Part shown: positions 18,158 through 59,096 of the stretch, in pieces | Position numbering within the stretch: position 1 is the stretch's first letter | Layout: each line of letters begins with the position of its first letter | Virus record (IMG/VR): IMGVR_UViG_3300023174_000033 | Location: 400,606-464,605 of that record | Reading direction: 5' to 3' (one strand) | DNA: 64,000 bases | Notes under the pieces: generated by a model | Databases searched by the model: none | What the model was told of the DNA's origin: nothing | The model's input: only the letters and a program-made list of their open reading frames with translations | Translations under genes and position numbers: made by a program

Positions 18158-18159
18158 AA

Positions 18160-18189
18160 TAAAAAACCCACCAAATAGGTGGGTTTTTC
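18160..18189. terminator. Bidirectional intrinsic terminator
   Basis: AAAAACCCACC-AAATA-GGTGGGTTTTT between convergent genes. Confidence 0.8.
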
Positions 18190-18191
18190 CA

Positions 18192-18500: not shown

Positions 18501-18553
18501 CTTTAAATACTTTAATTTATGTAATTGTATATATTAAATGTAAAAACTCTTTT

Positions 18554-26587: not shown

Positions 26588-26661
26588 AGACAGGTGGCGC
26601 AATCGGTGAGCGCAGGACTCTTATACGGTCAAGGTTGTGGGTTCAAGTCCCATCCTGTCAA
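26588..26661 (+). tRNA. tRNA-Ile(UAU)
   Basis: D arm GCGC/GCGC, anticodon loop CT-TAT-AC, T arm GTGGG-TTCAAGT-CCCAT. The 1:72 pair is an A:A mismatch. No encoded CCA. Confidence 0.8.
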
Positions 26662-26718
26662 CAAATAAAATCTGTAAACAAAGAGGGCTAATAATATAAA
26701 ATATTAAGATATATAAAA

Positions 26719-26792
26719 GGGCTCTTAACTCAGTAGGTCAGAGTGTCGGTCTCATAAACCGGAAGTCGTTGGTTCAAACCCAACAGGGCCCA
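26719..26792 (+). tRNA. tRNA with CAU anticodon (Met or lysidine-type Ile2)
   Basis: Acceptor GGGCTCT/AGGGCCC, loop CT-CAT-AA, T arm GTTGG-TTCAAAC-CCAAC. No encoded CCA. Confidence 0.9.
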
Positions 26793-26825
26793 CACTTTTT
26801 TATTAAAAAAAACTAATTAACTAAC

Positions 26826-38903: not shown

Positions 38904-38950
38904 TTAAGATTATTTTATTTTTTAGTTATATATAAAAACAATATTTGGGT

Positions 38951-39184
38951 TTATTCCAAAATCTTGTGGATTTTATATTGTCGGATTTCTTCTAAATTTC
39001 TTTCCATGAAAGTTTCATAAACTATTTTTTTCGCTTCTGAATTATCTGGTAACACATTTGCACAGCAAGTAAAGTCAGGACAACACTCATCATCTATTTG
39101 ATTATGTTTTGATACTCCACCCATCCAATCAAGAAGTTGCTCGTAACTTCTTATACTGTATCCTGTTTTTTTATTTCTATACAT
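38951..39184 (-). CDS. Small Cys-cluster protein with C-terminal tag
   Basis: ECCPDFTCC. Ends IRQYKIHKILE. Confidence 0.75.
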   Translation of the reverse strand: MYRNKKTGYSIRSYEQLLDWMGGVSKHNQIDDECCPDFTCCANVLPDNSEAKKIVYETFMERNLEEIRQYKIHKILE

Positions 39185-39437
39185 TGTCTATTATACCCTC
39201 AATAATTTTATTTCTCTTATTTTGAAACTCTATTTGTTTATATTCTTCTTCAAAAAATATTCTATTAGCTAACTCAACAATTTGGTCATGAGCTTGGTCT
39301 GGACTTATCATACCACCCCATCTTTTTCTTTTTATCTGTTCACTATCAATTGATGTTAATATAGATATAGCTGCTAGTAGTAACTTACCCTCGTCTATAT
39401 TAGTGTCAATTTGTCTAAATTCTTCTACCTTTATCAT
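39177..39437 (-). CDS. Hypothetical protein with C-terminal tag
   Basis: Ends KRNKIIEGII. Confidence 0.75.
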   Translation of the reverse strand: MIKVEEFRQIDTNIDEGKLLLAAISILTSIDSEQIKRKRWGGMISPDQAHDQIVELANRIFFEEEYKQIEFQNKRNKIIEGIIDNV

Positions 39438-39441
39438 ACAT

Positions 39442-39476
39442 AAAAAAACCCCACACTTTGGGTGTGGGGTTTTTAT
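39442..39476. terminator. Intrinsic terminator
   Basis: AAAAAACCCCACAC-TTTGG-GTGTGGGGTTTTT. Confidence 0.85.
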
Positions 39477-39490
39477 TAAAAAAATCTCAA

Positions 39491-41083
39491 TTAGTTTTTA
39501 ATAAACTTAACTGTTTCTTTAGTACTGTTTGATGTGAGGGTAAGGAAATAAACACCATTAGCAAGATTGTTAATAGAAACTTCTTGTGTAGGAGTGTCAT
39601 AAAGTTCCCCATCCATAGAACCTTCGGTCATTAATTTACCTTGGGAATTTCTAATAGAATAGTTATATACACCCTCCTCAGCGATAGTAGCAATAAATTC
39701 AATTTTATCACTTACAATGTTTCCATTTACAATTTCAAGTGGGAACATTTCCTCAGGTACACCACCGTCCATGAAAGTTGATTCACCTTCAACGATTGCT
39801 CTACGAACATTAACAGATCCCTCACAAGAAAATCCGATAGGAGTTGAACCTGGAGGAGGTGGAGGAAGTTGAGAAATAATGATGTTGTCCATATCATATC
39901 CATCTGCACCACTACCGAAATCAGCAGGGTTTGAAGCATCTTGGAATTTTATGAAATTAACGATTGAGAACTCAGGTCCGAAAGAAGATAGGTCAATAGC
40001 AGCTGATGTTCCAGCGATGCCAAGAGCATCTTTACAGATAAGTACAGTACTAGACCAATTTACACCATCAGCAGACACACTTACGTTTGCTTTCTCAGGG
40101 TAACTTGGACAAGGTTGGTTGTTCCAAGTTGTTTCAAAAGAAAAGAATTCAGCACCAGGACCATTAAAAACGGTATAAGGAAGTTGTAGACAAGCCCAAC
40201 CACCGAATCCAAGTGACCAGAAGTTGTAAGAACCACTAGCTGGTCCAGAATCACGAAGACCTGGGTTAGATAAAGCAGCTGATGGGAATCCAATTTCATT
40301 GATATTAGCGTTAGCGAAATTCTTACGAACACCAACAATACCACGGCCAGGGAAATTACCAGCAGCTCCAACAAATTGTGAAGCAACTCCTTGTTGATAT
40401 TCACAAATTGGTGAGGTTGGGGTATTGCCAGCAGTAGGCATTTCATAATTCACTGTGATACCATCAACATCATAACCATCAACACCATCACCTTGAACAT
40501 TCCAAGCTGGATTTGTTCTATCAGTAATACGTACATATTGAGCTTTCATAAGAGGGAAAATATCAAAAGAACCATTGTAACAAGTATTGTAAGCACCACC
40601 TGGTCCCAAAGTAATTGTACCAGGAGTAATCCAATTAACACCATCTTCGGAAACTTCTACAAGAGCTTGTTCTGAATTTGTTGGACGACACGTAGGATTT
40701 CCCCAAGTAGTTTCGTGGATAGTGATGTCATTACCAACTCCATTAGAAATCCATTCAGATGAACGAAGTACCATTTCACCACCGAATCCAAGAGATACGA
40801 AGTTCATAGCACCAGTGATATCAGATTGTTCAGCCACTAAAGCTTTACTCGGAATAGAACGAGCACCTACGGGATAACCCAAAGTATTACCAGGATTTCC
40901 AGCACCTGGACTCAGCACCCGTGAAGATTTTGCGGTGTTTCCGGATCTGAGTGAACTAGCAACGTGACCACGGGCAGGTCCTTGCTTCACACACATAACT
41001 TCCCAAGTCATAGCTTGAGAATTCTGAAGGGTTGTGAAAATTCCACCAACCACAGCAGTTAACATTAGAAAAAGGTTTTTCAT
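39491..41083 (-). CDS. Secreted protein with two SLGFGG repeat domains and a T9SS type A C-terminal domain
   Basis: Likely start MKNLFLML (41083). Two copies of SLGFGG...ETTW...E.A.VSVS.DG.NW. Ends INNLANGVYFLTL...ETVKFIKN. Confidence 0.85.
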   Translation of the reverse strand: MKNLFLMLTAVVGGIFTTLQNSQAMTWEVMCVKQGPARGHVASSLRSGNTAKSSRVLSPGAGNPGNTLGYPVGARSIPSKALVAEQSDITGAMNFVSLGFGGEMVLRSSEWISNGVGNDITIHETTWGNPTCRPTNSEQALVEVSEDGVNWITPGTITLGPGGAYNTCYNGSFDIFPLMKAQYVRITDRTNPAWNVQGDGVDGYDVDGITVNYEMPTAGNTPTSPICEYQQGVASQFVGAAGNFPGRGIVGVRKNFANANINEIGFPSAALSNPGLRDSGPASGSYNFWSLGFGGWACLQLPYTVFNGPGAEFFSFETTWNNQPCPSYPEKANVSVSADGVNWSSTVLICKDALGIAGTSAAIDLSSFGPEFSIVNFIKFQDASNPADFGSGADGYDMDNIIISQLPPPPPGSTPIGFSCEGSVNVRRAIVEGESTFMDGGVPEEMFPLEIVNGNIVSDKIEFIATIAEEGVYNYSIRNSQGKLMTEGSMDGELYDTPTQEVSINNLANGVYFLTLTSNSTKETVKFIKN

Positions 41084-41117
41084 AAAATTTTTATAGTTTT
41101 TTCTTTTATATATCATG

Positions 41118-41153
41118 AAAAATGGGTGAAGTTTAAGATTTCACCCATTTTTT
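41118..41153. terminator. Intrinsic terminator
   Basis: AAAATGGGTGAA-N7-TTTCACCCATTTT. Confidence 0.75.
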
Positions 41154-41182
41154 CTTTGTACTTTTCCAAGATCCTTAAAAAA

Positions 41183-41350
41183 CTAACTGGTTTTTTTATC
41201 TTTCTCCTCTAAATATTTAAGAGCTTCTTTATATCCTTTTACGAATCCGGTAATTTCCGCTGATCTATGTCCGGTAAAAAATGTTTCGTTAAAAGGGTTG
41301 TAGGGTATTAACTTTTCAGCTAATTCTCTAATTTCTTGATCAGATTTCAT
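41183..41350 (-). CDS. Small hypothetical protein (55 aa)
   Basis: MKSDQEIRELAEKL..., follows 41354..41737 directly. Confidence 0.55.
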   Translation of the reverse strand: MKSDQEIRELAEKLIPYNPFNETFFTGHRSAEITGFVKGYKEALKYLEEKDKKTS

Positions 41351-41353
41351 AAC

Positions 41354-41737
41354 TTATTTATTAAATAAATCGTTTAATTTTCTATCTCTTATTTCTTGTT
41401 TGAAAAATTGAAATTGATAATCCATATATTGACAATTAAAATTGTAATCAGTTGGGACTGTTTCATAAGGTTGGTGACGAGTTCCGAATTTACCACTTAA
41501 TTCAAAATGTATCCCACCTGCAACATAAATATTGACTTTCATTATGTATCTTTCCGAACCTCTGAAAGTTATTGTATGTGCTCCTAATTCTGGTACTAAT
41601 ATCACACAGGTGTCTAAATTCCAAATTTGTGGTAATTCTTTTTTAACTTTGAACCCAATAGACACAAGGAAATCTCTAGCTTCTTTTACTTTTTCGAAAC
41701 CTTCGTAGTTTTCCTCTATGTAAATGTTTTCATCCAT
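41354..41737 (-). CDS. Hypothetical protein with C-terminal tag
   Basis: Ends EIRDRKLNDLF. Confidence 0.75.
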   Translation of the reverse strand: MDENIYIEENYEGFEKVKEARDFLVSIGFKVKKELPQIWNLDTCVILVPELGAHTITFRGSERYIMKVNIYVAGGIHFELSGKFGTRHQPYETVPTDYNFNCQYMDYQFQFFKQEIRDRKLNDLFNK

Positions 41738-41739
41738 AA

Positions 41740-41772
41740 TAAAAAAAACCCTCCTTTTTAGGGAGGGCTTTG
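41740..41772. terminator. Intrinsic terminator
   Basis: AAAACCCTCC-TTTTTAG-GGAGGGCTTT. Confidence 0.75.
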
Positions 41773-41775
41773 ACT

Positions 41776-43089
41776 TTACTTAACAAAATTTGTAACTACC
41801 ACTTTGTCACCACTCCTAACCATCGCCCGATAAACTCCACTTGGTTTAGTTCGGATTTTATCAAGGTCTTGATTCACATTATTATTATTTGTTTTAATAA
41901 CAAGTTGTCCAAATGAATTGTAAATATAAACTTCTCCGGCAAAATTACTTGGAAAGTTTGTTCTTAAAGTTCCATTTTGATAGTAGAAATAAGAACGAAC
42001 ATCATTTAGTTTTTTAGCTGACAAAATTCCAGGAATTACAATAGTGCAAATTGAATCAGCTCCCAAGTTGTAATTGTCGGAAGTCTTTTTCAATTTGAGA
42101 TAAAATTTCTCATAACCTTCAGATTGATCGTCGTTATTAATCGTAATTCCGAAACTAGTAGTTGTGGTTCCAATCGGAAAAGTCGCAAGTGCCGGTTGTT
42201 GTAAGATAAAATCAGCAGAATCAGTGTCTACATTCTGTACAGAAATCAAACAAGCAATCTGTTGATTTACTGGTACCGTAGAATTTAGTGGCATACTGAG
42301 AACAGTACCTTCCTCAATAACATAATTCGTATCAGCAAAACTGATTACAGGAATTTCAAGGGGGGCGGATGGTGTGATATCAGCAGAAGACCTTGGGAGA
42401 AGTTGGTACCTTGAATCTCTTGGAATAGAGGAATCAAACTGACCACCCATACCTACAACATCAACTTTACCAGTTGGAACAGGTGCTCCGAAAAGGTCAC
42501 AATCATTATCAATACGAACATCAAACTCTTGATAATCAGTTGTGCCAGCAACTCCTCTGAAAGCTTTAGCGGTAAATCCAGAACCACTTGGCACAGCTGG
42601 CCAGCTATTTGGTAGAAATTCTAAATTCTGCATTTTAACCAAGTAGGATTCAGAAACCTCACTCAAATCGGTAACGACTCTTGGTTGTGTTAATTGACAA
42701 TTGGTTTTTAGAATTTTAATTGTATCAATTACAATTTGTGATAGTCCGTTGAAACAGTTTACCATTCCGATAACTTTAACACTATCACCTTCGTTCAAAG
42801 TAACTCCGATATCAAGTGTAGCTTTAAAAAGCCCAATTCCACATCGGTTGCTTAACAAAGTATCAGCTCGTTTCTCAACGAGACTTAGTTGGATTCGCCC
42901 GTTAGCTAATCCAAAATTCTTTCCATAAACGACTCCTTGTGTCCTAACAAACACCGAGTCATAATCCGAACAACCACCTTGGGTTGTGTCCAAACCTCTG
43001 ATTTCATCCACATTCAAACTTAGAATTTGAGGCTGTGAAAACAGAGACATACTAATTAGTAGAAAAATTGTTGTAAAAATGTATCTCAT
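41776..43089 (-). CDS. Secreted protein: OB-fold-like repeats, Calx-beta domain, T9SS type A C-terminal domain
   Basis: Signal peptide SLFS|QP. ISFADTNYVIEEG...ITINNDDQSEGYEKF (Calx-beta). Ends IYNSFGQLV...PSGVYRAMV...TNFVK. Confidence 0.85.
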   Translation of the reverse strand: MRYIFTTIFLLISMSLFSQPQILSLNVDEIRGLDTTQGGCSDYDSVFVRTQGVVYGKNFGLANGRIQLSLVEKRADTLLSNRCGIGLFKATLDIGVTLNEGDSVKVIGMVNCFNGLSQIVIDTIKILKTNCQLTQPRVVTDLSEVSESYLVKMQNLEFLPNSWPAVPSGSGFTAKAFRGVAGTTDYQEFDVRIDNDCDLFGAPVPTGKVDVVGMGGQFDSSIPRDSRYQLLPRSSADITPSAPLEIPVISFADTNYVIEEGTVLSMPLNSTVPVNQQIACLISVQNVDTDSADFILQQPALATFPIGTTTTSFGITINNDDQSEGYEKFYLKLKKTSDNYNLGADSICTIVIPGILSAKKLNDVRSYFYYQNGTLRTNFPSNFAGEVYIYNSFGQLVIKTNNNNVNQDLDKIRTKPSGVYRAMVRSGDKVVVTNFVK

Positions 43090-43215: not shown

Positions 43216-43593
43216 ATGGAGGAAAGGAATAAAATAATGATAGTTGACGAGTCGGAAACTATTTCATTAATCACTAGCAAACTATTTGAATTTCAACACT
43301 GGAATGTAACAAAAGCAATCAGTGGTGAAATGGCTCTAGAATTTATACAAAATGAAGATTTTGATGTGATTCTTATGGATATAAATCTACCAGGAATGAC
43401 TGGAATAGAGTGTTGTCATCTAATAAGAAAAATGGAAGATAAAAGAAAATCTAAAACCCCCATCTTTGCGGTTACTGGAAATGATTTAAATTTAACAGAA
43501 AAGGAATATAAAGATAGGGGATTTAGTGAATTTTTTGAAAAACCAACTAACTTTCAACTACTAATAGATAAACTTAAAAAGATTCTGGACTAA
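43216..43593 (+). CDS. Stand-alone response-regulator receiver domain
   Basis: IMIVDE, DVILMDINLPGMTG, AVTG, EKP: all receiver landmarks. AATATATA at 43204-43211. Confidence 0.9.
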   Translation: MEERNKIMIVDESETISLITSKLFEFQHWNVTKAISGEMALEFIQNEDFDVILMDINLPGMTGIECCHLIRKMEDKRKSKTPIFAVTGNDLNLTEKEYKDRGFSEFFEKPTNFQLLIDKLKKILD

Positions 43594-45296: not shown

Positions 45297-45384
45297 AAGA
45301 TTTGTGAAATATTTTAAGTTATATACTATTAGATTAAAAGTTTTTTGGGTGGACAAAGTTATTAAAAATTTTAATATATATGTC

Positions 45385-47325
45385 ATGCTTACAAATTTTG
45401 ACGATTACATCTATGAGGAATATCTCAAATTAGACCTACCACTTTATTATACCAAAGAATTAAAATCTACACTCGGAGCAATTGCATCTAAAGGAGATTC
45501 AGTAGCTAGTTTTCTTTATTATGGAGAATCCACAGATGCTGTGAAATCAGATATTACTTTTGTAGGTTTAGGCGAAGGTAATGATAAGGTAAGTTTTATT
45601 CAAGTCAATCGTGTCCTTAGAATGATCGATAAAGAACTAGGCGATCCAGAATCTAAAAATCAAGGAACTCTCAAGGGGCAATTAGAGGAAGATTATATTA
45701 ATAAAATATGGAGAATCAAACAAAATTTTGACCACCCAGCTTGGAAAGAACAAAGAACTGAATTGGGTGTGGGTAGATTTGCAACTAAGATTTCACAAAA
45801 AGCTGGTAAAAACTTCACACCACCACAAATAAATGCATTCGTTGATAAGTTTAAAGCTTACAGAGATTTCCAAACCACAAAGAAAGATAAGTTTGAATTA
45901 GTATCAGGTGAGGATATCAGAAAATGGTATGATGAAGATACTTACGAAGATGCAGAATATCACCTATCAAACTCTTGTATGAGGTATGCTAGATGTCAAA
46001 GGTATTTAGACATATATGTTGAAAATCCAAATCAAGTTTCAATGGTTATCCTAAAAGGAACTGATCCTAATAAAATCATTGGTAGAGCTCTTATTTGGAA
46101 ATTAGAAAATGGGAATTATTACTTAGATAGACCTTATGCTAATAATGATGAAGATATAAATTTATTCAAAGAGTGGGGTAGAAGTAAAGGTTATACTGTC
46201 TATGGGGCTAGCTATGACCACAAAGAAGTAGTATTGGATAAGGCTAATTTTTCCTACTACCCATATATGGATACTTTCAAATATCTAAATAGAGATGATA
46301 AAACACTAAGCACTGATGCAAACGAATATGATAATGGTAATCAAGATTGGATTAAATTAGAAAGTACTGGAGGTGATTTTGAAGAAGTAGAAAGAGGTGT
46401 TTATTCTGAATATTATGGTGAATATATTGATGAAGATAGTGCTGTTTTTGCGGAAGATATACAAAGTTATATACATTCAGATGATGCTTATTATTTAGAA
46501 TATAAAGACACATATGTTCACAATGATGCTGACGTGGTATATTCTGAATTTGATGGTCAATACTATTTAAGTGAAGATGCCATTAAGTCTGAATATTTAG
46601 ATACTTATATCTATTCAGATGATGCACTAAATGTATTTACCTCACCAGATGAGGAAGATTATGTGCCAGACTCATTCAGAGAGAAAGGATTAGTTAAAGA
46701 ATATTATTTAGATGGTTCACCAAAATGGTGTATATCTGCAAATGTATTTAAAAGCCCATTCTCCAATGAGTATTTCTTTAGAACTGGGACTGTCAAAGTA
46801 TTCACTGTGCAAGATGGTGGACTGATGACACAAAATGAGGCAGATACTAAAGACATAGATACCAAAGGTCTTGAATCTGACTATATGGAAATTGATGATT
46901 ATCTATCAAAAAGAATTAAACCTTTAACCAAAGATCAATTTACAGAAAAGGTCAAGAGTTTAGAATTTACTGAAAATCAAATAAATGATTTCAAAAGGGA
47001 TAGTAGTTCACAATTATATACTCTCAATTCATTTTTTAGGGATGTTACACTTGATGAAATAGAAAGAATGATGAAACTTCTAATATGGCTTTCTTATAGT
47101 GCTAGTGAAAGAGATCAGTATGGTAAACCGAAAAGTAAAAATAGAAGGAATTTGATTGAATCAATGAAAAGTAAATGCCAAGAATTTATCACAAATGAAA
47201 GGTTCTATGGGTTACAAAGTATGAGCATAGAAAGTCTATTCCGAACAATGGATGCCAACCTTAGTGATTATATAAGAAACGAAGAATTATTAGCTCAAAT
47301 TATTCTTTATAAGAATAGTATTTAA
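45385..47325 (+). CDS. Large conserved phage protein with acidic internal repeats and tag-like N-terminus
   Basis: Start reassigned to MLTNFDDYIYEE (AATATATA at 45373-45380). NSCM...GRALIW...YLDRPY domain, YSEY/SEF...DA repeats. Confidence 0.8.
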   Translation: MLTNFDDYIYEEYLKLDLPLYYTKELKSTLGAIASKGDSVASFLYYGESTDAVKSDITFVGLGEGNDKVSFIQVNRVLRMIDKELGDPESKNQGTLKGQLEEDYINKIWRIKQNFDHPAWKEQRTELGVGRFATKISQKAGKNFTPPQINAFVDKFKAYRDFQTTKKDKFELVSGEDIRKWYDEDTYEDAEYHLSNSCMRYARCQRYLDIYVENPNQVSMVILKGTDPNKIIGRALIWKLENGNYYLDRPYANNDEDINLFKEWGRSKGYTVYGASYDHKEVVLDKANFSYYPYMDTFKYLNRDDKTLSTDANEYDNGNQDWIKLESTGGDFEEVERGVYSEYYGEYIDEDSAVFAEDIQSYIHSDDAYYLEYKDTYVHNDADVVYSEFDGQYYLSEDAIKSEYLDTYIYSDDALNVFTSPDEEDYVPDSFREKGLVKEYYLDGSPKWCISANVFKSPFSNEYFFRTGTVKVFTVQDGGLMTQNEADTKDIDTKGLESDYMEIDDYLSKRIKPLTKDQFTEKVKSLEFTENQINDFKRDSSSQLYTLNSFFRDVTLDEIERMMKLLIWLSYSASERDQYGKPKSKNRRNLIESMKSKCQEFITNERFYGLQSMSIESLFRTMDANLSDYIRNEELLAQIILYKNSI

Positions 47326-47369: not shown

Positions 47370-48110
47370 ATGGACCCGTTTAGTGAGTCATTTGGTTTTG
47401 GTGAATATAAATCACAAGCAATAGATTTATTAAAAACTACCATCGAAATTTTAAATGAATTCGAAATACCAAACATGCTAATATCCGGCACTTTACTTGG
47501 ATATATCAGACACAATGATTTTATACCTTGGGATGATGACATAGACTTACTTGTTGATTCTTCAATCCTAAGAAAACTAGGTAAGATTGCTGAAAAATAT
47601 GATAACATTAATATTTTTTACAAAAATAAATATGATGCTATTAAATTCTGTTTTGATTTTGGAAAACCCATAAGTGATAAATCTTGGGAAATGTCAATAA
47701 TAGATGGTAAAATTCAAAGAAAATCAAAACTTAATTTTCCATTTGTAGATTTATTTATCTATGAATCTGGTTACGGGACTCATATTTGTGGACAAGAACA
47801 ACATATCGAAATTGATGGTGAAATTAGAAAAATGTTTATGCCCTTTTCTGGTCCTTGTGATAGGTGTTTTAGATTCATAAAATCGGATGAATTAGTTTTT
47901 TTTCACAACGATTGGAAGAAAAAGAACTTTTTCCCTCTACAAGAAGTAGATTTTTTAGGAATAAAATGTAATATACCTAAAAATCCCCACCATTTTTTAA
48001 AAAAAAATTACGATGGGGATTATATGAAAGTAATTGAGTCAAGAAACTACGACCATAAAAACAACTTAAAAGTAGAAAATATAACTAAAAAACCTTATGT
48101 TAGAAATTGA
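47370..48110 (+). CDS. licD: LicD-family (fukutin-like) phosphotransferase
   Basis: ISGTLLGYIRHNDFIPWDDDIDL, VDLF, NIPKNP..FL...Y. Confidence 0.85.
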   Translation: MDPFSESFGFGEYKSQAIDLLKTTIEILNEFEIPNMLISGTLLGYIRHNDFIPWDDDIDLLVDSSILRKLGKIAEKYDNINIFYKNKYDAIKFCFDFGKPISDKSWEMSIIDGKIQRKSKLNFPFVDLFIYESGYGTHICGQEQHIEIDGEIRKMFMPFSGPCDRCFRFIKSDELVFFHNDWKKKNFFPLQEVDFLGIKCNIPKNPHHFLKKNYDGDYMKVIESRNYDHKNNLKVENITKKPYVRN

Positions 48111-49869
48111 AGAATTAAAAACACATTTGCCGACTGGTGTAGATGCAAAGATTATGCAGTATGAGGAAAATGCTACAAACATCTCCGATGATAAAATTGA
48201 TTTTCCTAAATTATTGGATGGCACACAAACTACCATACTCATAAATATGGAAAGACATACTGAGAGATATCATGTAAGTTTGGAACAATTAAAAAAACTA
48301 TCAATACAAAATTTTGTACACCTTAAAGGAACTGATGGTAAAATTAAATCTCAGTTGGAACAGGATCTAACTTACATCTTGGGGTTTATCAAACAATTCA
48401 ATGATAAGGTAGTTAGTAATCAAATAGAAATAAATGATTTCTCAGAAGTAAATAATCAAGGTGTAAATCTACAAGATGGACCACTTGGCTGTTATTGTTC
48501 ACATCTTAGAGCAATGATTTATGGTTACTTATCTGGTAGTGATTACACTATAATTTGTGAAGATGATATTTCTATTACAAACACAAAAAATATTGAGGAG
48601 TATATACCAAAAATTCCAAATGATTGGGATGTTATTTTCTTGAACTCAAGACCCAAAAATGTTTTACATGACGAACCTTATTATAAATTCATTGATGAAT
48701 TCCATTCTGGTCACTTTTATATTATCAAAAACAAAGCTCTACCTACCATATTTAGTGGTATGTACCCGATGAACGACCAAGTAGATGTTCTACTTTCTTT
48801 CTTACACAAGAAATTGAATATGTATAACATACCAGATACTGTTTATCAAAAGAACTTAGAAACCAATACCCAAAACAATCTTGATATTATTTTTAGTTCA
48901 CCTAACTATATTCCAGTAACAGATGCTTTAAACAAATCAGAAGAAATATTAAATCACTATGCTAATAAAATTCTTCCTGATAACACAGACCAAAATAGAT
49001 TGATTGTAAAGCATTTGATGTATGATATGATTTACAATTTTATACTAACTAAAGGCATTAATAACGAACCAGATCCCAACATAGAAGACTATGTTTTTGA
49101 TAATCCCCATATTGGAAAATGGAGATATACTAAGTTGGAAAAATTTGTTGGATTTTTCTTACAATGTACGAAAAAAGGAATTAACCCAAAGTTAGCTGGT
49201 CAAGGTTTAACAAATGCACTGTTATTTACTTTAAATAAGTTCACTGAATTACATGATACTGATGGAGATATTAAAGCTTATGGATTTGGATCGACTGCTC
49301 ATACCTACAAAGTTGGTAATGATTTGTTAATCAAAAGATATAATAAAAAATTGAGGTGGGCTACTGAAGGTCATGATGACCCCAAAAAAATTATGAATAA
49401 GGAAATAGAACTTTTGGAAAAATTAAAAAATGTAAAATCGGTTCCGAAAATAGTTGACTATGACAATAGAGATATCATTATGGAATATAGGGGGGAATCT
49501 ATCTATAATGATTTTAACTTACCTACTGATTGGAAGGATCAAATAACAAATATATTTTCTGAACTTACTAATAATGGTGTATTTTATCCAGAGTTTAGGT
49601 TGCAGAATATCCTTGTATTAGATGGTAAGATTAGTTTTGTTGATTTTGGTATGGCTGAGTTTAGGGATAAATGTGATAACGCTATCAATCTCGAAAAGTT
49701 TATTAAGTATTTGAGTTTACTTGAGGATAAGTTTAAGATTGTAATTGATTTAGATGCTAGACAAAGGTTGATTTCAACTTTTCTAAAAAATGTTAATATG
49801 CCAACGCCGACCATAGACCAGAAGTTTTCGGAAGGTATTGAACCATTGTTTGGTAATGACTTTTTTTAG
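48097..49869 (+). CDS. GT25 glycosyltransferase fused to a C-terminal kinase-like domain
   Basis: LINMERHTER, GCYCSH, ICEDD. Then GFGSTAH, LIKRY, IIMEYRG, YPEFRLQN, FVDFG. Confidence 0.8.
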   Translation: MLEIEELKTHLPTGVDAKIMQYEENATNISDDKIDFPKLLDGTQTTILINMERHTERYHVSLEQLKKLSIQNFVHLKGTDGKIKSQLEQDLTYILGFIKQFNDKVVSNQIEINDFSEVNNQGVNLQDGPLGCYCSHLRAMIYGYLSGSDYTIICEDDISITNTKNIEEYIPKIPNDWDVIFLNSRPKNVLHDEPYYKFIDEFHSGHFYIIKNKALPTIFSGMYPMNDQVDVLLSFLHKKLNMYNIPDTVYQKNLETNTQNNLDIIFSSPNYIPVTDALNKSEEILNHYANKILPDNTDQNRLIVKHLMYDMIYNFILTKGINNEPDPNIEDYVFDNPHIGKWRYTKLEKFVGFFLQCTKKGINPKLAGQGLTNALLFTLNKFTELHDTDGDIKAYGFGSTAHTYKVGNDLLIKRYNKKLRWATEGHDDPKKIMNKEIELLEKLKNVKSVPKIVDYDNRDIIMEYRGESIYNDFNLPTDWKDQITNIFSELTNNGVFYPEFRLQNILVLDGKISFVDFGMAEFRDKCDNAINLEKFIKYLSLLEDKFKIVIDLDARQRLISTFLKNVNMPTPTIDQKFSEGIEPLFGNDFF

Positions 49870-49892
49870 AAAAGTTAAAAATTTTCTATGAT

Positions 49893-50435
49893 ATGAACAA
49901 TTGTTTCAAACAAATTGATGTTAAAATTAAATTCAATGGGTCATTATCAGATATAAAATCTGACTTACACATGACTCATGACAAGTGGCAAAAATATGGA
50001 CTCACTCTAAAGAAAAAAGAAAATTATGAGGCTTCAATTGCAACTACATACGAGGTAACAGATCAAGTAAAATCATATGTACTCTCAAAAATCCCAACTG
50101 AATTACTTCAATTAGAAACACCAAAAGTTTGGTATCTTGAAGTTACTGGAACAAATAAAAGTACAACAATGGTTCCACCACACATTGACACTTTTAGGAT
50201 ATGTACAATAAATTTTTATATCAATACCAATGGCGAGACAACTAAATTTTACGAATATAAATCCGGAACTATTATAGATGAAATTGGTGAGTTTTGTGCA
50301 AAAGACAATGAATGTTTTATCCTAAACACCACCGTACCACATTCGGTAAAACTTATGTCAGAAAAAAAAAGATCGGTAATTGGAGCTTCGTTCATAAAGA
50401 CCCCATATGAAAAAGTAATAACTTATTTCTCTTAA
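49893..50435 (-). CDS. 2OG-Fe(II) dioxygenase-like protein
   Basis: PPHIDT...INFY...VPHSV...R...ASF facial-triad pattern. Confidence 0.7.
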
Positions 50436-51040
50436 AAAATATCTTCCAAGGTAGTTATCTTCCTCAAGTATCTATAATGTCCACCTATCAATTCATATTT
50501 CATATCAAACCTACTAACAACAGGTAAAATTTCACACTCCTCACCTGTTTGAATATAGGTGTTAAAAATGTGTTTGAATAAATCAAAGTTAGTTATTTGT
50601 GGAGAACAAAGCTCAATGAAATCATTTCGGTTTGGTATAACGTATCCAACATCTTTCAATTGAGCTAGGCCGTTTAGCATCGGTAAATAAAATTGAGAGT
50701 GTAGATTTTTATTTGAACTTTCTAAAAGCCTTTCCACCATTGACTCTGTGATATAAGGTCTAGCAGCATCATGAATTAGAATGTTTGAACACTTGTCAAT
50801 GTTGGATAGTGCAACTTTTATAGATTCCAATCTTGAATCGTTATCTGTTAGCAAAACGTCACCATATATTTTTAAGTAACAATCTGAATTAGCAACGATA
50901 ATCACATCGTCAAGATATTTGGAAAATAGATCAATTGAATGTTGAACCATAGGTTTATCACCTATAGGATATAATTGTTTTGGAATTTCCGAATTAAATC
51001 GAGTTGATTTACCAGCGGCTAATATAACACCTATGTTCAT
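50432..51040 (-). CDS. IspD/TarI-like cytidylyltransferase
   Basis: ILAAGKSTRF...PKQL, SRLESI, LIHDAARP, KITTLED. Confidence 0.8.
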   Translation of the reverse strand: MNIGVILAAGKSTRFNSEIPKQLYPIGDKPMVQHSIDLFSKYLDDVIIVANSDCYLKIYGDVLLTDNDSRLESIKVALSNIDKCSNILIHDAARPYITESMVERLLESSNKNLHSQFYLPMLNGLAQLKDVGYVIPNRNDFIELCSPQITNFDLFKHIFNTYIQTGEECEILPVVSRFDMKYELIGGHYRYLRKITTLEDIF

Positions 51041-51528
51041 TAAAATTTATATAGTTTTACTGACCAATCCTTCCAATCATTTTTAGAAGTCAATTGGGCT
51101 CTATCGTATTTATCCCACTTTTTCAAGTCAATATCCAACCAATCAGTAATTTCTCTATTTGCTTTATCAAGATTCAAATTCCGATTGAATGCTTTAGCAA
51201 AACAATAAGTAATATAACCTTTAGCTCTGTGCTCATAATCTTTTGCATCAAAGCCAAGTTTTTTAGCTTTATTGATTACAGTGATTTCACAATCATATTC
51301 ATATTCATATACTTTCATACCTTTATGAACCTCTGCCCGAGCAATGTGGGTTATTTCGTGAAGGCAAATAAGGAATCTATTTAGAGTTGTTGGATCGGGT
51401 ATTTCTACGAGTTTTTCTTTAATGAAAGCAACTCCACAATCACCCTTTCTCCATTTCCTAACTTGGATACCATAGAAACGAAGTTCATCATCAACGTATT
51501 TTTTTGCCCACTCTGAATTGAATTCCAT
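51040..51528 (-). CDS. HExxH zinc-metallopeptidase-like protein
   Basis: CLHEITH...YEYE. Start MEFNS (51528), 4 nt after TATCTTTG at 51540-51533. Confidence 0.7.
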   Translation of the reverse strand: MEFNSEWAKKYVDDELRFYGIQVRKWRKGDCGVAFIKEKLVEIPDPTTLNRFLICLHEITHIARAEVHKGMKVYEYEYDCEITVINKAKKLGFDAKDYEHRAKGYITYCFAKAFNRNLNLDKANREITDWLDIDLKKWDKYDRAQLTSKNDWKDWSVKLYKF

Positions 51529-51591
51529 AACACAAAGATACAACTTTTTTTTGATTTGTCAATACAATAAGAACAAAAAAAAATTAGTTAT

Positions 51592-54810: not shown

Positions 54811-56574
54811 ATGAAATTACTCGATGGAAAAAAGGCTTCTAAAATAATACTTTCTGAATTAAAATATAAAATAAAAAAAATTACTGAAAGAAATAATGAA
54901 ATAAAAATACCAAAAATTGCGATAGTTCTGGTCGGTGATAATCCTAGCAGTATGTCTTATATGAGGTCAAAACTAAAGATATCATCGGAAAATAATTTCA
55001 ATGCTCAATTGTTTTTTTATTCTGACTTTATAAAAGAAGATGAATTGCTAAACGAAATTGATAAGTTAAACAATTCATCAGATATTGATGGGGTCATAGT
55101 TGAACTACCCCTACCAAATCAAATATCCCAAGAAAAAATAATTAACCGAATTGATCCACAAAAAGATATTGATGGCTTCAATCCGATTAACTTTGGCAAA
55201 ATGTCTCTTGGCCAAAAAGCACACAGACCCGCTACAGCTTATGGTATTCTAAAACTTCTGGAATTTTACAAAATTTATACAACGAGCAAACACATTGTTG
55301 TTATTGGAAGATCAAATATAGTTGGAAAACCTATATCTATAATGTTAGGAAATGACTTTGATATTGGTAGAGCGACAGTAACTTCATGTGATATAAACAC
55401 ACCAATTGAACTATTAAGAGAAGAATCAAGAAGAGCTGATATTATAATCGTAGCAGTTGGTAAAGTAAATCTTTTAAAAGAAGATATGGTAAAGGATGGT
55501 GCCATAGTTATTGACGTTGGCATAAATATGGTTGGTGATACAATCGTAGGAGATTGTGATTTTGAAAACGTATCTCCGAAATGTGAATGGATCACACCTG
55601 TTCCAGGTGGTGTTGGCCCAATGACAATTTGTGCACTTCTTTTGAACACATTTGCAACTTGGTATGAAAAAAATAAAATACTTGAAGAAAAGATAAATTC
55701 AATTGACTACACAGTTAAACTGATTGAGAGTCTAGACCAAAGTTTCTCACCCACCACGGATGGAAAAAAACTAATCGGAACCTACGATCATAATAGAATT
55801 CCAGGTGATAATGAAGTAATTCATGTCATAGGTGATTATCCAGTCGGAAAGCATTCACTAATAACAGAAAATCCAAGTTTCAGACATTATAAATGGGCAA
55901 TGAAGTTCAGCTATGATTCATTTGAGGGTAATACCTGTTGGGATGGAATTGATGATATTTGGATCATCAACGATACCGTTAGACAAGATAGACTTTATGA
56001 TACCCTGAAAGAATTCAAGAAAATTGGGATACCGCTCAATAAAGTAAAAATACAACCAGCCGAATTCAATAGTTCAACCGGTAATAATTACGCAAATAAA
56101 CTAATTGGATGTTTCAAATCACACCTTAAAATATTTGAACAATATCAAGATAAAGATTTTAAACATTTATTAATTTTTGAAGATGATTTTACTTTTTCCG
56201 ATCCGATTGAAGAGTCACAAAGACAAATTAGAGAATTTGTCTCAAGAGACTATGAATATGATGTGATGTTATTCTCAACAAGTTGTATCGGTCAAATAAT
56301 TCCAATTGATGATTTGATAAGTGAATCAAAACAACCTTGTACAACAACTGCTGGTTATATGGTCTCAAAGAAGGGACTTGAAAAAATTATACCACTTTGG
56401 CACGAAGGAATAAACGGTCTACTTGGATGGTGTGATTTCAATCAATTTGCTTGTGATAAATATTGGACAAAAATTCAGAAAGATGGACAAATGTTTTCTT
56501 TTAACGCAAAAATTGGATACCAAAGACCAAGCTATAGTACAACTCTTGGCAATTTGAGTTACAATTTAGATTAA
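54811..56574 (+). CDS. folD: FolD (methylene-THF dehydrogenase/cyclohydrolase) fused to a GT25 domain
   Basis: LLDGK, KDIDGF, VIGRSNIVGKP, IDVGIN, TPVPGGVGPMT in the first ~290 aa. IGCFKSH, IFEDD, TTAGYMVS, QRPSYS after. One uninterrupted frame. Confidence 0.85.
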   Translation: MKLLDGKKASKIILSELKYKIKKITERNNEIKIPKIAIVLVGDNPSSMSYMRSKLKISSENNFNAQLFFYSDFIKEDELLNEIDKLNNSSDIDGVIVELPLPNQISQEKIINRIDPQKDIDGFNPINFGKMSLGQKAHRPATAYGILKLLEFYKIYTTSKHIVVIGRSNIVGKPISIMLGNDFDIGRATVTSCDINTPIELLREESRRADIIIVAVGKVNLLKEDMVKDGAIVIDVGINMVGDTIVGDCDFENVSPKCEWITPVPGGVGPMTICALLLNTFATWYEKNKILEEKINSIDYTVKLIESLDQSFSPTTDGKKLIGTYDHNRIPGDNEVIHVIGDYPVGKHSLITENPSFRHYKWAMKFSYDSFEGNTCWDGIDDIWIINDTVRQDRLYDTLKEFKKIGIPLNKVKIQPAEFNSSTGNNYANKLIGCFKSHLKIFEQYQDKDFKHLLIFEDDFTFSDPIEESQRQIREFVSRDYEYDVMLFSTSCIGQIIPIDDLISESKQPCTTTAGYMVSKKGLEKIIPLWHEGINGLLGWCDFNQFACDKYWTKIQKDGQMFSFNAKIGYQRPSYSTTLGNLSYNLD

Positions 56575-58367: not shown

Positions 58368-59096
58368 ATGGCAAAGAAATTTGAAATATCAGATACCATT
58401 GACCTCTATTTCAAAGAAATTGAGAAGGTATCATCACCTCTTACTAAAAAAGAGGAACACGCACTTGCTGTAAAAATACAAGCAGGTGATACAAATGCTT
58501 TGAACGAATTGGTTTTACACAACCTAAAATTCGTTGTATTACTCGCAAACAAATTTATTGGAATGGGTGTTAATATTGATGATTTAATCCAAGAAGGTAA
58601 TGCTGGTTTGATTGAAGCCGCTAAAAGATTCACATCCGATAAAGACACAAGATTTATAACATATGCTCAATTTTGGATAAGAAAATATCTTAATGAATCA
58701 ATTGTGGAATATGGCAGAACAGTAAAACTACCACACAATAAAGAGTATGATATTTATAAACAAAAAGTTGCTGGAGAATGGGAGGGAAATTTACACAATG
58801 TGGAATTGGACAAAACCATGGGTGATGAAAATGAAGATACTTTAGGCGACCACATATTATCTGAAGAATTTTCAGATCCATTTCAAAACGAAGAACAAAA
58901 TAATCAACTAATTTTTTTCTTAAACAAATTAACACCCGAGGAGATAAAAATAACAAAACTATTTTATGGAATTGAACAAACTTCATCATTATCAACAAGA
59001 GAGGTTGGAAATATAGTTGGAATAGAAGAGTCAAAGGTTAATAGAATTCTAAAAATTGCAAGAAGCAAAATGAGAAAAGCAATTACAAAAAAATGA
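58368..59096 (+). CDS. RNA polymerase sigma-70-family factor (regions 1.2, 2 and 4)
   Basis: IDLYFKEI...LT.KEE..LA, ELVLHNLKFVV, DDLIQEG..GL.EAA.RF, RFITYA.FWIR, C-terminal HTH. Confidence 0.9.
   Translation: MAKKFEISDTIDLYFKEIEKVSSPLTKKEEHALAVKIQAGDTNALNELVLHNLKFVVLLANKFIGMGVNIDDLIQEGNAGLIEAAKRFTSDKDTRFITYAQFWIRKYLNESIVEYGRTVKLPHNKEYDIYKQKVAGEWEGNLHNVELDKTMGDENEDTLGDHILSEEFSDPFQNEEQNNQLIFFLNKLTPEEIKITKLFYGIEQTSSLSTREVGNIVGIEESKVNRILKIARSKMRKAITKK

What the first reader, a model, noticed from the sequence alone, without database searches (positions are those of the whole stretch)
47370..51040. LicD + GT25-kinase + IspD/TarI-like cluster: a fukutin-like polyol-phosphate glycan decoration module
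Seen: LicD and GT25-kinase overlap as an operon, converging on an IspD-like cytidylyltransferase and an oxygenase. Established: IspD/TarI enzymes make CDP-polyols, LicD/fukutin enzymes transfer phosphocholine or ribitol-phosphate from CDP donors onto glycans, and LicA-type or chain-terminating kinases act in such pathways. Inference: a near-complete pathway to build a glycan and cap it with polyol-phosphate on host LPS or on the virion.
Basis: partly seen in the sequence, partly recalled or inferred. Interest (0 to 1): 0.6.

Follow-up and report, generated by a model that had tools for sequence, protein, structure and literature searches.

The report
Viral LicD–GT25/kinase–IspD glycan cassette
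A 465-kb uncultured jumbo phage carries a three-gene cassette, also found in other huge phages and in a giant virus of eukaryotes, that probably makes a CDP-activated polyol-phosphate and attaches it to a sugar chain, but the target molecule and the exact polyol are still unknown.

Summary
In order they are LicD (47370-48110,+), a GT25 glycosyltransferase fused to a small RIO/Bud32-like kinase (48097-49869,+), a 180-aa protein with a 2OG-oxygenase-type HxD...H...RxS motif (49893-50435,+), and a convergent IspD/TarI-family cytidylyltransferase (50432-51040,-).

The genome is a 464.6-kb tailed phage with a T4-type capsid and a sigma-70-like factor, not a giant virus.

Main new result: LicD, GT25-kinase and the IspD-like gene form a conserved cassette.
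- Among 18 IMG/VR loci with a close LicD, the IspD-like gene is adjacent and convergent in 16 of 17 evaluable loci. GT25-kinase lies between them in 15 of 18.
- LicD is fused to GT25-kinase in some viruses.
- The flanks are otherwise unrelated. They include T4-like phages and one contig with XRN1, FEN1 and SNF2 genes, which are typical of giant viruses.
- No cultured phage and no prokaryote genome searched carries the fusion.

Catalytic motifs are intact in all three enzymes. The IspD-like protein keeps five of the six E. coli IspD residues that I recall as MEP contacts.

This supports a CDP-polyol to LicD phosphodiester decoration of a glycan. It does not show which polyol, what the kinase does, or whether the target is virion, host envelope or DNA. 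The genome has no polyol-phosphate-forming reductase, so "near-complete pathway" overstates the case.

The parts
47370..48110 (+). LicD-family phosphotransferase (nucleotidyltransferase fold), 246 aa. Predicted to move an alcohol-phosphate from a CDP-donor onto a glycan hydroxyl.
   Evidence: PF04991, 66.6 bits. The motifs LISGTLLG..RH.DFIPWDDD.DL and PF.DLF are invariant in 11 homologues. The only solved relative is FKRP.
48097..49869 (+). Bifunctional GT25 glycosyltransferase and minimal protein-kinase-like domain, 590 aa. Overlaps the LicD stop by 14 nt.
   Evidence: 469 metagenomic homologues with the same architecture were found.
48229..48891 (+). GT25 (GT-A) domain, about aa 45-265, with an invariant E155-D156-D157 (DxD) motif.
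   Evidence: PF01755, 40.1 bits. PHROG 2835 'glucosyltransferase', E=6e-17. Invariant columns in alignment A1.
49270..49806 (+). RIO/Bud32-like kinase domain, about aa 392-570. It has a GFGSTA loop, K413, E436, YPE499-F-x-L-x-N504 and D516-F-G. The usual catalytic Asp is an invariant Glu.
   Evidence: Alignments A1 and A3. AF2 model pLDDT 73, core 85-95. Foldseek and VIA matches. Best viral match is a Bodo saltans virus kinase-domain protein, 39% identity, TM-score by the target 0.82.
49893..50435 (+). 180-aa putative 2OG-Fe(II) oxygenase or hydroxylase. Lineage-specific add-on directly behind GT25-kinase.
   Evidence: H97xD99...H150...R160 are invariant in A2, with S161 in the phage-lineage rows. 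It holds the same position in relatives L036-L038 at 62-63% identity. It is absent from the more distant cassette loci. Pfam gives only E=0.05. Atlas look-alikes are 2OG-FeII_Oxy_3 and Asp/Asn/Pro hydroxylase clusters.
50432..51040 (-). Divergent IspD/TarI/ISPD-family cytidylyltransferase, 202 aa. Predicted to make the CDP-alcohol donor.
   Evidence: PF01128, 67.9 bits. Below the IspD and TarI model cut-offs. The profile hits both IspD and TarI structures. E. coli IspD R20, K27, R85, S88, D106, R109, R157, T165 (Ser or Thr here) and K213 are conserved; D139 and T140 are replaced.
51040..51543 (-). 167-aa ORF immediately upstream of the IspD-like gene on the same strand (1-nt overlap). It has an HExxH motif and matches no family. 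It is not part of the conserved cassette.
   Evidence: No homologue in the other cassette loci.
45385..47325 (+). 646-aa ORF heading the plus-strand run. It is preceded at 45373 by the genome's over-represented upstream motif. It has two paralogues in the genome and is not conserved with the cassette.

Best explanation
This is a portable viral glycan-decoration cassette.

Proposed steps:
1. The IspD-family enzyme condenses CTP with a small polyol-phosphate taken from host metabolism and makes a CDP-polyol. Ribitol-5-P is the best guess by analogy; methylerythritol-4-P is the alternative.
2. The GT25 domain adds a hexose to an acceptor.
3. LicD transfers the polyol-phosphate from the CDP-donor onto that glycan as a phosphodiester.
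4. The kinase domain fused to GT25 phosphorylates the same glycan or acceptor. It does not supply the small-molecule precursor.

In this phage lineage a small 2OG-oxygenase-like protein was added behind GT25-kinase. Close relatives add further glycosyltransferases.

The cassette occurs both in huge phages and in a giant virus of eukaryotes. I therefore favour a virus-encoded target, namely virion surface proteins such as the collagen-like or adhesin-like proteins encoded nearby, over host LPS.

Shown: gene families, intact motifs, conserved synteny and fusions. Inferred: donor identity, order of steps, role of the kinase, and target.

My sub-estimates: CDP-alcohol to LicD coupling about 0.75; the donor is a polyol-phosphate about 0.55; the target is the virion about 0.4.
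For: - LicD and the IspD-like gene are adjacent and convergent in 16 of 17 evaluable viral loci. GT25-kinase lies between them in 15 of 18. The flanks are otherwise unrelated.
- LicD-GT25-kinase fusions exist: L009/L057, P0206 and P0217.
- The kinase domain is nearly always C-terminal in 570-950-aa glycosyltransferase proteins.
- Pairwise divergence of the three proteins is correlated, Mantel r 0.61-0.85.
- Catalytic motifs are intact in LicD, GT25 and the IspD-like protein.
- Of the E. coli IspD residues that I recall as MEP contacts, D106, R109, R157, T165 and K213 are conserved.
- The LicC-type phosphocholine enzyme scores far lower than IspD and TarI structures (34 bits against 54-96).
- A full CTP synthase lies on the same strand, 1.7 kb upstream of the IspD-like gene, in L045, L047 and L061.
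- Established chemistry: ISPD makes CDP-ribitol, which the LicD-family enzymes FKTN and FKRP use (PMC4873967). The LicD family uses CDP-conjugates, including CDP-glycerol (PMC11666461).
- For a virion target: the cassette sits in a contig with XRN1, FEN1 and SNF2 as well as in T4-like phages. In L003 it is next to a baseplate gene. In L009 it is next to a homologue of this phage's concanavalin/LamG-like protein. Here it lies within about 20 kb of collagen-like, F5/8-type-C and Calx-beta proteins.
Against: - No biochemical data exist.
- The IspD-like protein fails both the IspD (87 bits against 181) and TarI (51 against 166) cut-offs. The D139/T140 positions are replaced, so the substrate may be neither MEP nor ribitol-5-P.
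- No reductase that would make ribitol-5-P was found in the genome.
- The kinase has Glu in place of the catalytic Asp, and its substrate is unknown.
- Every characterised prokaryotic LicD and GT25 enzyme acts on envelope glycans. The window also carries an LPS-type ADP-heptose epimerase. Both points favour a host-envelope target.
- The collagen repeats have no Lys at the Y position, so the collagen hydroxylysine-galactose route known for GT25 does not apply.
- Only one cassette locus was verified as giant-virus-like.
Confidence: 0.4

Rival explanations
1. The chemistry is the same, but the target is the host cell envelope. The enzymes act on LPS core, O-antigen or capsule precursors at the cytoplasmic face of the inner membrane. 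This changes the surface, for example to block superinfection or to stop progeny sticking to debris.
For: - The bacterial relatives of all three domain types work on LPS/LOS or teichoic acid. From general knowledge these include LicD (phosphocholine on LOS), the GT25 enzymes Lic2A, LpsA and LgtB, and the WaaP and KdkA kinases.
- Atlas look-alikes of the kinase include Kdo/WaaP-family clusters.
- An orphan ADP-heptose 6-epimerase lies 10 kb away (367 bits, above the equivalog cut-off).
- The host is a bacterium: the phage has a sigma-70-like factor and a T4-type capsid.
- Benler et al. proposed envelope modification for phage licD (PMC8008677).
Against: - The cassette also occurs in a giant-virus-type contig whose host has no LPS.
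- The genome has no heptosyltransferase and no GmhA.
- The benefit to a lytic jumbo phage is unclear.
Confidence: 0.3
2. This is a lic-like small-molecule route. The kinase domain phosphorylates a free alcohol (a polyol, choline or similar), the cytidylyltransferase activates it, and LicD transfers it. The kinase would then play the role of LicA rather than act on the glycan.
For: - The pathway would be self-contained without a reductase, which is indeed missing.
- Kinase, cytidylyltransferase and LicD together follow the logic of the lic operon (general knowledge).
- A phage APH-like kinase plus a cytidylyltransferase are needed for a nucleotide-sugar in another system (bioRxiv 10.1101/2023.12.21.572611).
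Against: - The kinase is always fused to glycosyltransferases and never to the cytidylyltransferase.
- Three loci keep LicD and the IspD-like gene with no kinase at all: L049, L051 and L052.
- The fold is a minimal RIO/Bud32 type. No specific choline-kinase match stands out: APH(2'') ranks 39th by Foldseek, and the best Z scores go to protein kinases and RNA kinases.
- The cytidylyltransferase is IspD-type, not LicC-type.
Confidence: 0.12
3. This is DNA hypermodification. The oxygenase-like protein makes a hydroxylated base in phage DNA. GT25, LicD and the kinase then build a glycan or phospho-adduct on it, which protects the genome from host nucleases.
For: - Phage gene clusters with GT-A or GT-B glycosyltransferases, a kinase-like enzyme, a cytidylyltransferase and 2OG dioxygenases have been shown to glycosylate 5hmC, including with heptose. 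Those enzymes resemble LPS and teichoic-acid enzymes (bioRxiv 10.1101/2023.12.21.572611).
- The neighbourhood here holds MazG, a FolD-GT25 fusion, a methyltransferase-like gene and a heptose epimerase.
- The relative L038 has an AlkB-like oxygenase inside the cluster.
Against: - The 180-aa protein shows no Tet_JBP match, and none is found in the genome.
- The thymidylate-synthase homologue passes the true ThyA equivalog cut-offs and lies 30 kb away.
- The conserved core of LicD, GT25-kinase and IspD-like gene exists without any oxygenase in most loci.
- No LicD enzyme is known to act on DNA.
- The cassette also occurs in a giant-virus-type contig.
Confidence: 0.08
4. The genes are unrelated auxiliary genes. 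The IspD-like enzyme boosts host MEP/isoprenoid synthesis and LicD separately modifies teichoic acid, as first suggested for Flandersviridae.
For: - The best structural and sequence matches of the IspD-like protein are true IspD enzymes (T. maritima IspD, 95.6 bits).
- This is the published interpretation in PMC8008677.
Against: - The tight convergent pairing with LicD recurs across unrelated viral genomes, including a eukaryotic-virus context.
- No other MEP-pathway gene is seen beside it.
- Its score is far below the IspD equivalog cut-off.
Confidence: 0.05

Closest known systems
Mammalian ribitol-phosphate pathway on alpha-dystroglycan (ISPD/CRPPA, FKTN, FKRP, with POMK and RXYLT1)
   Same: - An IspD-family cytidylyltransferase is paired with a LicD-family phosphotransferase (PMC4873967).
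- A glycan-directed kinase belongs to the same pathway.
- Close relatives of this phage add a glycosyltransferase with sub-threshold likeness to RXYLT1_C and GT47.
   Different: - Sequence likeness to FKRP is limited to the N-terminal catalytic motif. Human ISPD scores only 46 bits.
- The kinase is a RIO/Bud32-like minimal domain with no detected POMK likeness.
- The GT25 fusion has no counterpart in the mammalian pathway.
- Donor and acceptor are unknown here.
Bacterial CDP-polyol and phosphocholine decoration systems (TarI/TarJ with ribitol-phosphate transferases; LicA/LicC/LicD; H. influenzae LOS with GT25 Lic2A/LpsA plus LicD; LicD-family CpsC/Cps7C, PMC11666461)
   Same: - The enzyme families are the same: LicD, an IspD/TarI-type cytidylyltransferase, and GT25.
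- The logic is the same: a CDP-activated alcohol-phosphate is transferred to a glycan.
   Different: - There is no TarJ-like reductase and no LicC-type or LicA-type enzyme.
- GT25 is fused to a kinase, sometimes also to LicD. That architecture was not found in 185,579 prokaryote species genomes.
- The genes are virus-encoded.
licD + ispD insertion in 'Flandersviridae' gut phages (Benler et al. 2021, PMC8008677)
   Same: Adjacent LicD-family and IspD-family genes in a phage genome, noted there as new for phages.
   Different: - That report has only two genes and no GT25-kinase.
- It interpreted them as separate functions, isoprenoid synthesis and teichoic-acid phosphocholine.
- Here the pair is part of a wider cassette shared by jumbo phages and a giant-virus-type contig.
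- No sequence relation to those phage genes was detectable by tblastn in the cultured-phage set.
Glycan-directed protein-kinase-like kinases (WbdD, WaaP, KdkA, POMK)
   Same: - The fold is protein-kinase-like, physically coupled to glycan-building enzymes.
- WbdD appears among the Foldseek matches at rank 41.
- Kdo/WaaP-family clusters appear among the atlas look-alikes.
   Different: - The best matches are RIO, Bud32 and Ark1-type minimal kinases and generic protein kinases.
- The catalytic Asp is replaced by an invariant Glu.
- No family threshold is reached.
Phage DNA glycan-hypermodification gene clusters (bioRxiv 10.1101/2023.12.21.572611)
   Same: A glycosyltransferase, a kinase-like enzyme, a cytidylyltransferase and a 2OG-oxygenase-like gene are clustered in a phage, and the enzymes resemble LPS and teichoic-acid enzymes.
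   Different: - No TET/JBP-type dioxygenase or hydroxymethylase is detected here.
- LicD is not part of those clusters ('licd', 'gt25' and 'kinase' occur zero times in that text).

Membership tests
LicD family (PF04991) | Profile match above the curated cut-off | tested here: met
   66.6 bits against 22.6, E=4.5e-18. The genome-wide search finds the same ORF.
LicD family (PF04991) | Nucleotidyltransferase-fold catalytic motif: G-[ST] loop, DxD, and a third acidic residue | tested here: met
   LISGTLLG, DDD.D (D55-D59) and PF.D127LF are invariant in 11 homologues. They align with the FKRP catalytic segment.
LicD family (PF04991) | Uses a CDP-alcohol donor to form a phosphodiester on a glycan | not testable with these tools
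   Needs an enzyme assay. Supported only by the conserved pairing with a cytidylyltransferase.
IspD/TarI/ISPD cytidylyltransferases (PF01128) | Profile match above the cut-off and catalytic residues present (P-loop Arg, Lys27, Lys213 in E. coli numbering) | tested here: met
   67.9 bits against 27. R20, K27, R85, S88, D106, R109 and K213 are invariant in the alignment with E. coli IspD.
IspD proper (MEP cytidylyltransferase, TIGR00453) | Score above the equivalog cut-off; complete MEP-binding residue set | tested here: not met
   87.4 bits against a cut-off of 181.3. D139 and T140 are replaced by Gly and Leu in all cassette proteins. There is no ispF or other MEP gene nearby.
TarI (ribitol-5-phosphate cytidylyltransferase, NF001183) | Score above the subfamily cut-off; partner reductase (TarJ-like) | tested here: not met
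   51.3 bits against 166. No ADH_N-type reductase in the genome. TarI structures score 49-64 bits with the family profile, below T. maritima IspD at 95.6.
Glycosyltransferase family 25 (PF01755) | Profile match above the cut-off and a GT-A DxD motif | tested here: met
   40.1 bits against 24. E155-D156-D157 are invariant.
RIO/Bud32 kinases | Family profile above the cut-off | tested here: not met
   RIO1 16.3 bits against 22. Bud32 32.5 bits against 125.
Protein-kinase-like fold, active kinase | Two-lobed kinase fold with the ATP-binding Lys and Glu, a catalytic-loop Asp and Asn, and a DFG Asp | tested here: inconclusive
   The fold is met: Foldseek probability 1.0 and VIA Z 12-14 over about 135-175 residues. 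K413, E436, N504 and D516 are conserved, but the catalytic-loop Asp is an invariant Glu (E499).
2OG-Fe(II) oxygenases | HxD...H iron triad plus a basic residue that binds 2OG, on a double-stranded beta-helix | tested here: inconclusive
   The motif is invariant. The Pfam match is only E=0.05. There is no PDB sequence match. The AF2 model is too poor to search (pLDDT 44). hhalign against the phage's other oxygenase-like families is negative.
Phage DNA-hypermodification clusters | A TET/JBP-type dioxygenase or a hydroxymethylase close to the glycosyltransferase | tested here: not met
   No Tet_JBP match in the genome, though the control genomes cannot validate that search. The thymidylate-synthase homologue passes the ThyA equivalog cut-offs and lies 30 kb away.

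The most novel reading that the evidence does not exclude
Huge phages and giant viruses of eukaryotes share a horizontally mobile cassette that puts a polyol-phosphate cap on virion surface glycans. The polyol could be ribitol-phosphate or, more exotically, methylerythritol-phosphate taken from the host MEP pathway. This would be a viral counterpart of the fukutin/ISPD pathway and the first phosphodiester-linked polyol found on a virus particle. The GT25-kinase fusion would be a new kind of glycan-building enzyme.
Probability: 0.2. Interest if true: 0.8.

Novelty: new variant of a known kind. Interest (0 to 1): 0.55.

Why it matters
CDP-polyol/LicD chemistry is known from bacterial cell walls and from the human dystroglycan pathway. 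It has not been shown for any virus.

This cassette is compact, with three or four genes. It is abundant in metagenomes: 469 GT25-kinase homologues were found, on contigs up to 392 kb. It occurs in both bacterial and eukaryotic large viruses, so it looks like a general viral tool.

It can be tested by heterologous expression even though no host is in culture. The result would reassign a phage 'isoprenoid' auxiliary gene to glycan chemistry. It would also define the function of a virus-specific GT25-kinase fusion and could reveal a new virion, envelope or DNA modification relevant to adsorption, immunity or defence evasion.

Tried and rejected
Hypotheses tested and rejected:
- Giant-virus origin of this genome. 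There is no NCLDV capsid or A32 match. There is a T4 Gp23 capsid match, E=1.9e-25, and a sigma-70-like factor.
- Collagen hydroxylysine galactosylation as the job of GT25 plus the oxygenase. The two collagen-like proteins have Gln, Thr or Asp at the Y position and no Lys. Glycosylation of the GxT triplets is not excluded.
- A complete heptose or LPS-core pathway. Only HldD is present; there is no GmhA and no GT9.
- A hydroxymethylase. The thymidylate-synthase homologue passes the ThyA cut-offs.

Steps that gave nothing useful:
- Folding the 180-aa protein gave pLDDT 44, so no fold search was run.
- Profile and hhalign tests of that protein against PDB sequences and against the phage's other oxygenase-like proteins were negative.
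- The sigma-70 promoter and terminator scan found no more than chance.
- No megablast match in cultured phages. tblastn found no LicD there, and only the GT25 domain in cyanophages at about 24% identity.

Tools that failed:
- The atlas fold library was unavailable.
- The records behind the IMG/VR loci are not held, so whole-contig typing of those viruses was impossible.

Not attempted:
- No phylogeny of the IspD-like protein with characterised TarI and ISPD sequences. Only E. coli IspD could be fetched by reference.

Full report
**What is there.** The window is the last 64 kb of a single 464,605-bp IMG/VR virus contig that CheckV rates 98% complete. GC content is about 30%. In the flagged stretch the ORFs are:
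- LicD, 47370-48110 (+), 246 aa.
- A 590-aa protein, 48097-49869 (+), that overlaps the LicD stop by 14 nt.
- A 180-aa ORF, 49893-50435 (+).
- A 202-aa ORF, 50432-51040 (-).
- A 167-aa ORF, 51040-51543 (-), upstream of the 202-aa ORF.

Pfam gives LicD at 66.6 bits, Glyco_transf_25 at 40.1 bits over aa 45-180 of the 590-aa protein, and IspD at 67.9 bits. All three are above their curated cut-offs. The C-terminus of the 590-aa protein weakly matches RIO1 and Bud32. The only layout correction is that the oxygenase-like gene follows GT25-kinase on the plus strand, and only the IspD-like gene converges on the run.

**What kind of virus.** There is no NCLDV capsid or A32 match. There is a T4 Gp23 major-capsid match at E=1.9e-25. 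The genome also encodes a T4-type topoisomerase II subunit, an SbcC-like protein, ribonucleotide reductase and Hsp70. The window holds a sigma-70-like factor and a receiver domain. This is therefore a jumbo tailed phage of a bacterium. A sub-threshold type-IX-secretion sorting domain hints at a Bacteroidota host. The contig begins and ends inside the same collagen repeat, so the assembly is probably circular or permuted and broken in a collagen-like gene.

**The central finding: a conserved cassette.**
- A first scan of IMG/VR with LicD returned nine loci. BLAST showed that GT25-kinase (39-52% identity) and the IspD-like protein (29-47%) lie beside LicD in the same order and orientation. Almost no flanking gene is shared with this phage.
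- A profile scan returned 25 loci. Of the 18 with a close LicD, the IspD-like gene is adjacent and convergent in 16 of 17 evaluable loci. GT25-kinase lies between them in 15 of 18. Three loci have only LicD facing the IspD-like gene.
- The seven distant LicD loci have neither partner.
- Several loci are near-duplicates (for example L045 and L061), so the number of independent lineages is smaller than 18.
- Pairwise divergence of the three proteins is correlated, Mantel r 0.61-0.85. This fits inheritance as a unit, although relatedness of the genomes alone could contribute.
- LicD is fused to GT25-kinase in L009/L057. In the 1.84-billion-protein library, P0206 carries LicD, GT25 and kinase matches, and P0217 carries a LicD match with the kinase domain at its C-terminus.
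- The kinase domain is almost always the C-terminal part of 570-950-aa proteins. Where Pfam sees a second domain in them, it is a glycosyltransferase or LicD.

**Distribution.**
- The GT25-kinase architecture has 469 metagenomic homologues, on contigs up to 392 kb.
- It was not found in 185,579 prokaryote species genomes, where only 26-31% identical GT25 domains turned up. That scan has limited sensitivity.
- It was not found in 50,697 cultured-phage records.
- Flanks show both phage and giant-virus contexts. L003/L045 carries a T4 baseplate protein. L005/L048, at GC 21%, carries XRN1, XPG/FEN1 and SNF2 genes, which are typical of giant viruses of eukaryotes.
- The best viral structural match of the kinase model is a Bodo saltans virus protein, 39% identical.

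**The enzymes.**
- LicD keeps the invariant LISGTLLG..RH.DFIPWDDD.DL and PF.DLF motifs. Its only solved relative is FKRP, and the match covers the catalytic segment only.
- The GT25 domain keeps its EDD motif.
- The kinase model (pLDDT 73) has a protein-kinase-like fold. It is nearest to RIO, Bud32 and Ark1 minimal kinases and to generic protein kinases (Z 12-14); WbdD and APH also appear in the list. It keeps the Lys, Glu, Asn and DFG residues, but an invariant Glu replaces the catalytic Asp.
- The IspD-like protein belongs to the IspD/TarI/ISPD family. It reaches neither the IspD nor the TarI model cut-off. Its profile hits IspD and TarI structures alike and scores LicC much lower.
- Aligned with E. 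coli IspD, it keeps R20, K27, R85, S88, D106, R109, R157, T165 (Ser or Thr here) and K213. It replaces D139 and T140.
- That D106, R109, R157, T165 and K213 contact MEP, and that K27 and K213 are essential, is from my memory of the E. coli structure work. It is a lead, not a test. It suggests a small polyol-phosphate substrate but does not name it.
- The 180-aa protein has invariant H97xD99...H150...R160, with Ser at 161 in the phage-lineage homologues. The spacing fits prolyl-hydroxylase-type 2OG oxygenases. All profile and fold evidence is sub-threshold or unusable.
- The 180-aa gene is conserved directly behind GT25-kinase only in the close lineage (L036-L038) and is absent from the wider cassette.

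**Context that bears on function.**
- Close relatives (GT25-kinase 73-78% identical) insert further genes between the oxygenase-like gene and the IspD-like gene. These are a glycosyltransferase with RXYLT1_C (25.3 bits) and GT47 (24.7 bits) likeness, both just under their cut-offs, and a GT34.
- One relative (L036) has UDP-glucose dehydrogenase, an SDR, PRPP synthase, a methyltransferase and FolD upstream. Another (L038) has an AlkB-like oxygenase inside the cluster.
- L045, L047 and L061 carry a full CTP synthase on the same strand, 1.7 kb upstream of the IspD-like gene. This fits a CTP-consuming pathway.
- In this genome no TarJ-like reductase, heptosyltransferase, GmhA or TET/JBP enzyme was found.
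- The thymidylate-synthase homologue and the ADP-heptose 6-epimerase both pass their equivalog cut-offs.

**Interpretation.** The conserved pairing and the fusions make it very likely that the IspD-like enzyme supplies the CDP-donor for LicD. They also suggest that GT25, the kinase and LicD act on one acceptor. This follows established chemistry: ISPD makes CDP-ribitol for the LicD-family enzymes FKTN and FKRP (PMC4873967), and LicD-family enzymes use CDP-conjugates including CDP-glycerol (PMC11666461).

Three things remain inference: the donor, the kinase's role and the target.
- Donor. Ribitol-5-P is favoured by analogy. MEP is available in bacterial hosts and is the novel alternative.
- Kinase role. 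I favour a glycan-directed kinase, because it is always fused to glycosyltransferases and is dispensable in three LicD/IspD-only loci.
- Target. I weakly favour a virion target because the cassette spans phage and giant-virus contexts and sits near structural or adhesin-like genes. A host-envelope target is nearly as likely. All bacterial relatives of these domains work on LPS/LOS or teichoic acids, and an LPS-type heptose epimerase lies nearby.
- DNA hypermodification is a real but weaker rival, given recent evidence that phages repurpose such enzymes for DNA (bioRxiv 10.1101/2023.12.21.572611).

**Novelty and verdict.** The enzyme families and the chemistry are known, and a licD + ispD pair has been seen in phages before. 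New here are three things: the conserved three-gene cassette, the virus-specific GT25-kinase (and LicD-GT25-kinase) fusion, and its presence in both jumbo phages and a giant-virus-type contig. My four literature searches on LicD, fukutin or ribitol cytidylyltransferases in giant viruses or jumbo phages turned up no description of this. I rate it a new variant of a known kind, with interest 0.55. No read-based tool could be used.

Noticed in passing
whole genome G000; e.g. window 45373-45380 and upstream of the capsid gene at G000 247787 (-): The 8-mer AATATATA (extended TAATATATA) lies within 60 nt upstream of 106 of 427 ORFs, against about 4 expected. Its distance to the start codon is bimodal: 0-9 nt or 20-29 nt. 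It precedes both the major capsid gene and the 646-aa ORF that heads the LicD run. It is probably the phage's own promoter motif.
   Followed up: partly
window 54811-56574 (+): FolD (methylene-THF dehydrogenase/cyclohydrolase) is fused to a second GT25 domain (aa 413-527). In the relative L036, FolD is unfused (297 aa). I found no explanation for a folate enzyme fused to a glycosyltransferase.
   Followed up: partly
window 61197-62168 (+): An ADP-L-glycero-D-manno-heptose 6-epimerase (HldD) scores 367 bits, above the equivalog cut-off. The genome has no GmhA and no heptosyltransferase. The gene abuts the collagen-like gene.
   Followed up: partly
window 62163-63998 (-) and 20793-23657 (-); L043 1-345 (-): There are two collagen-like proteins with GPQ, GFQ, GDQ and GxT repeats and no Lys at the Y position. 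One runs off the window end, and its N-terminus is at the contig start. The contig is therefore broken inside the repeat and the genome is probably circular or permuted.
   Followed up: yes
window 58368-59096 (+), 43216-43593 (+), 26588-26793 (+): A phage-encoded sigma-70-like factor, a stand-alone response-regulator receiver domain, and tRNA-Ile(TAT) plus tRNA-Met.
   Followed up: no
window 51040-51543 (-): The 167-aa ORF just upstream of the IspD-like gene carries an HExxH (HEITH) motif but matches no family. It is absent from the other cassette loci.
   Followed up: partly
L036 10265-11769 and 1-2765; L038 10241-10813: Close relatives enlarge the cluster with an RXYLT1_C/GT47-like glycosyltransferase (sub-threshold) and a GT34. 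L036 also has UDP-glucose dehydrogenase, an SDR and PRPP synthase upstream, and L038 has an AlkB-like 2OG oxygenase. In this genome the homologues of the 271-aa and AlkB-like genes lie elsewhere (G000 5723-6538 and 18019-18591).
   Followed up: partly
L045 12479-14104 (-): A full-length phage-encoded CTP synthase (469 bits to solved CTP synthases) and a class-II amidotransferase-like gene lie on the same strand, upstream of the IspD-like gene, in a T4-like phage contig.
   Followed up: yes
window 37929-43089 (-): A run of surface-protein-like genes: an M43 metallopeptidase, an F5/8 type C protein with a sub-threshold type-IX-secretion sorting domain, and a Calx-beta protein. They are possible virion or host-interaction proteins and a hint of a Bacteroidota host.
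   Followed up: no
window 45385-47325 (+): A 646-aa protein with no family match has two paralogues elsewhere in the genome (G000 72528-73826 and 181578-182561, about 34% identity).
   Followed up: no
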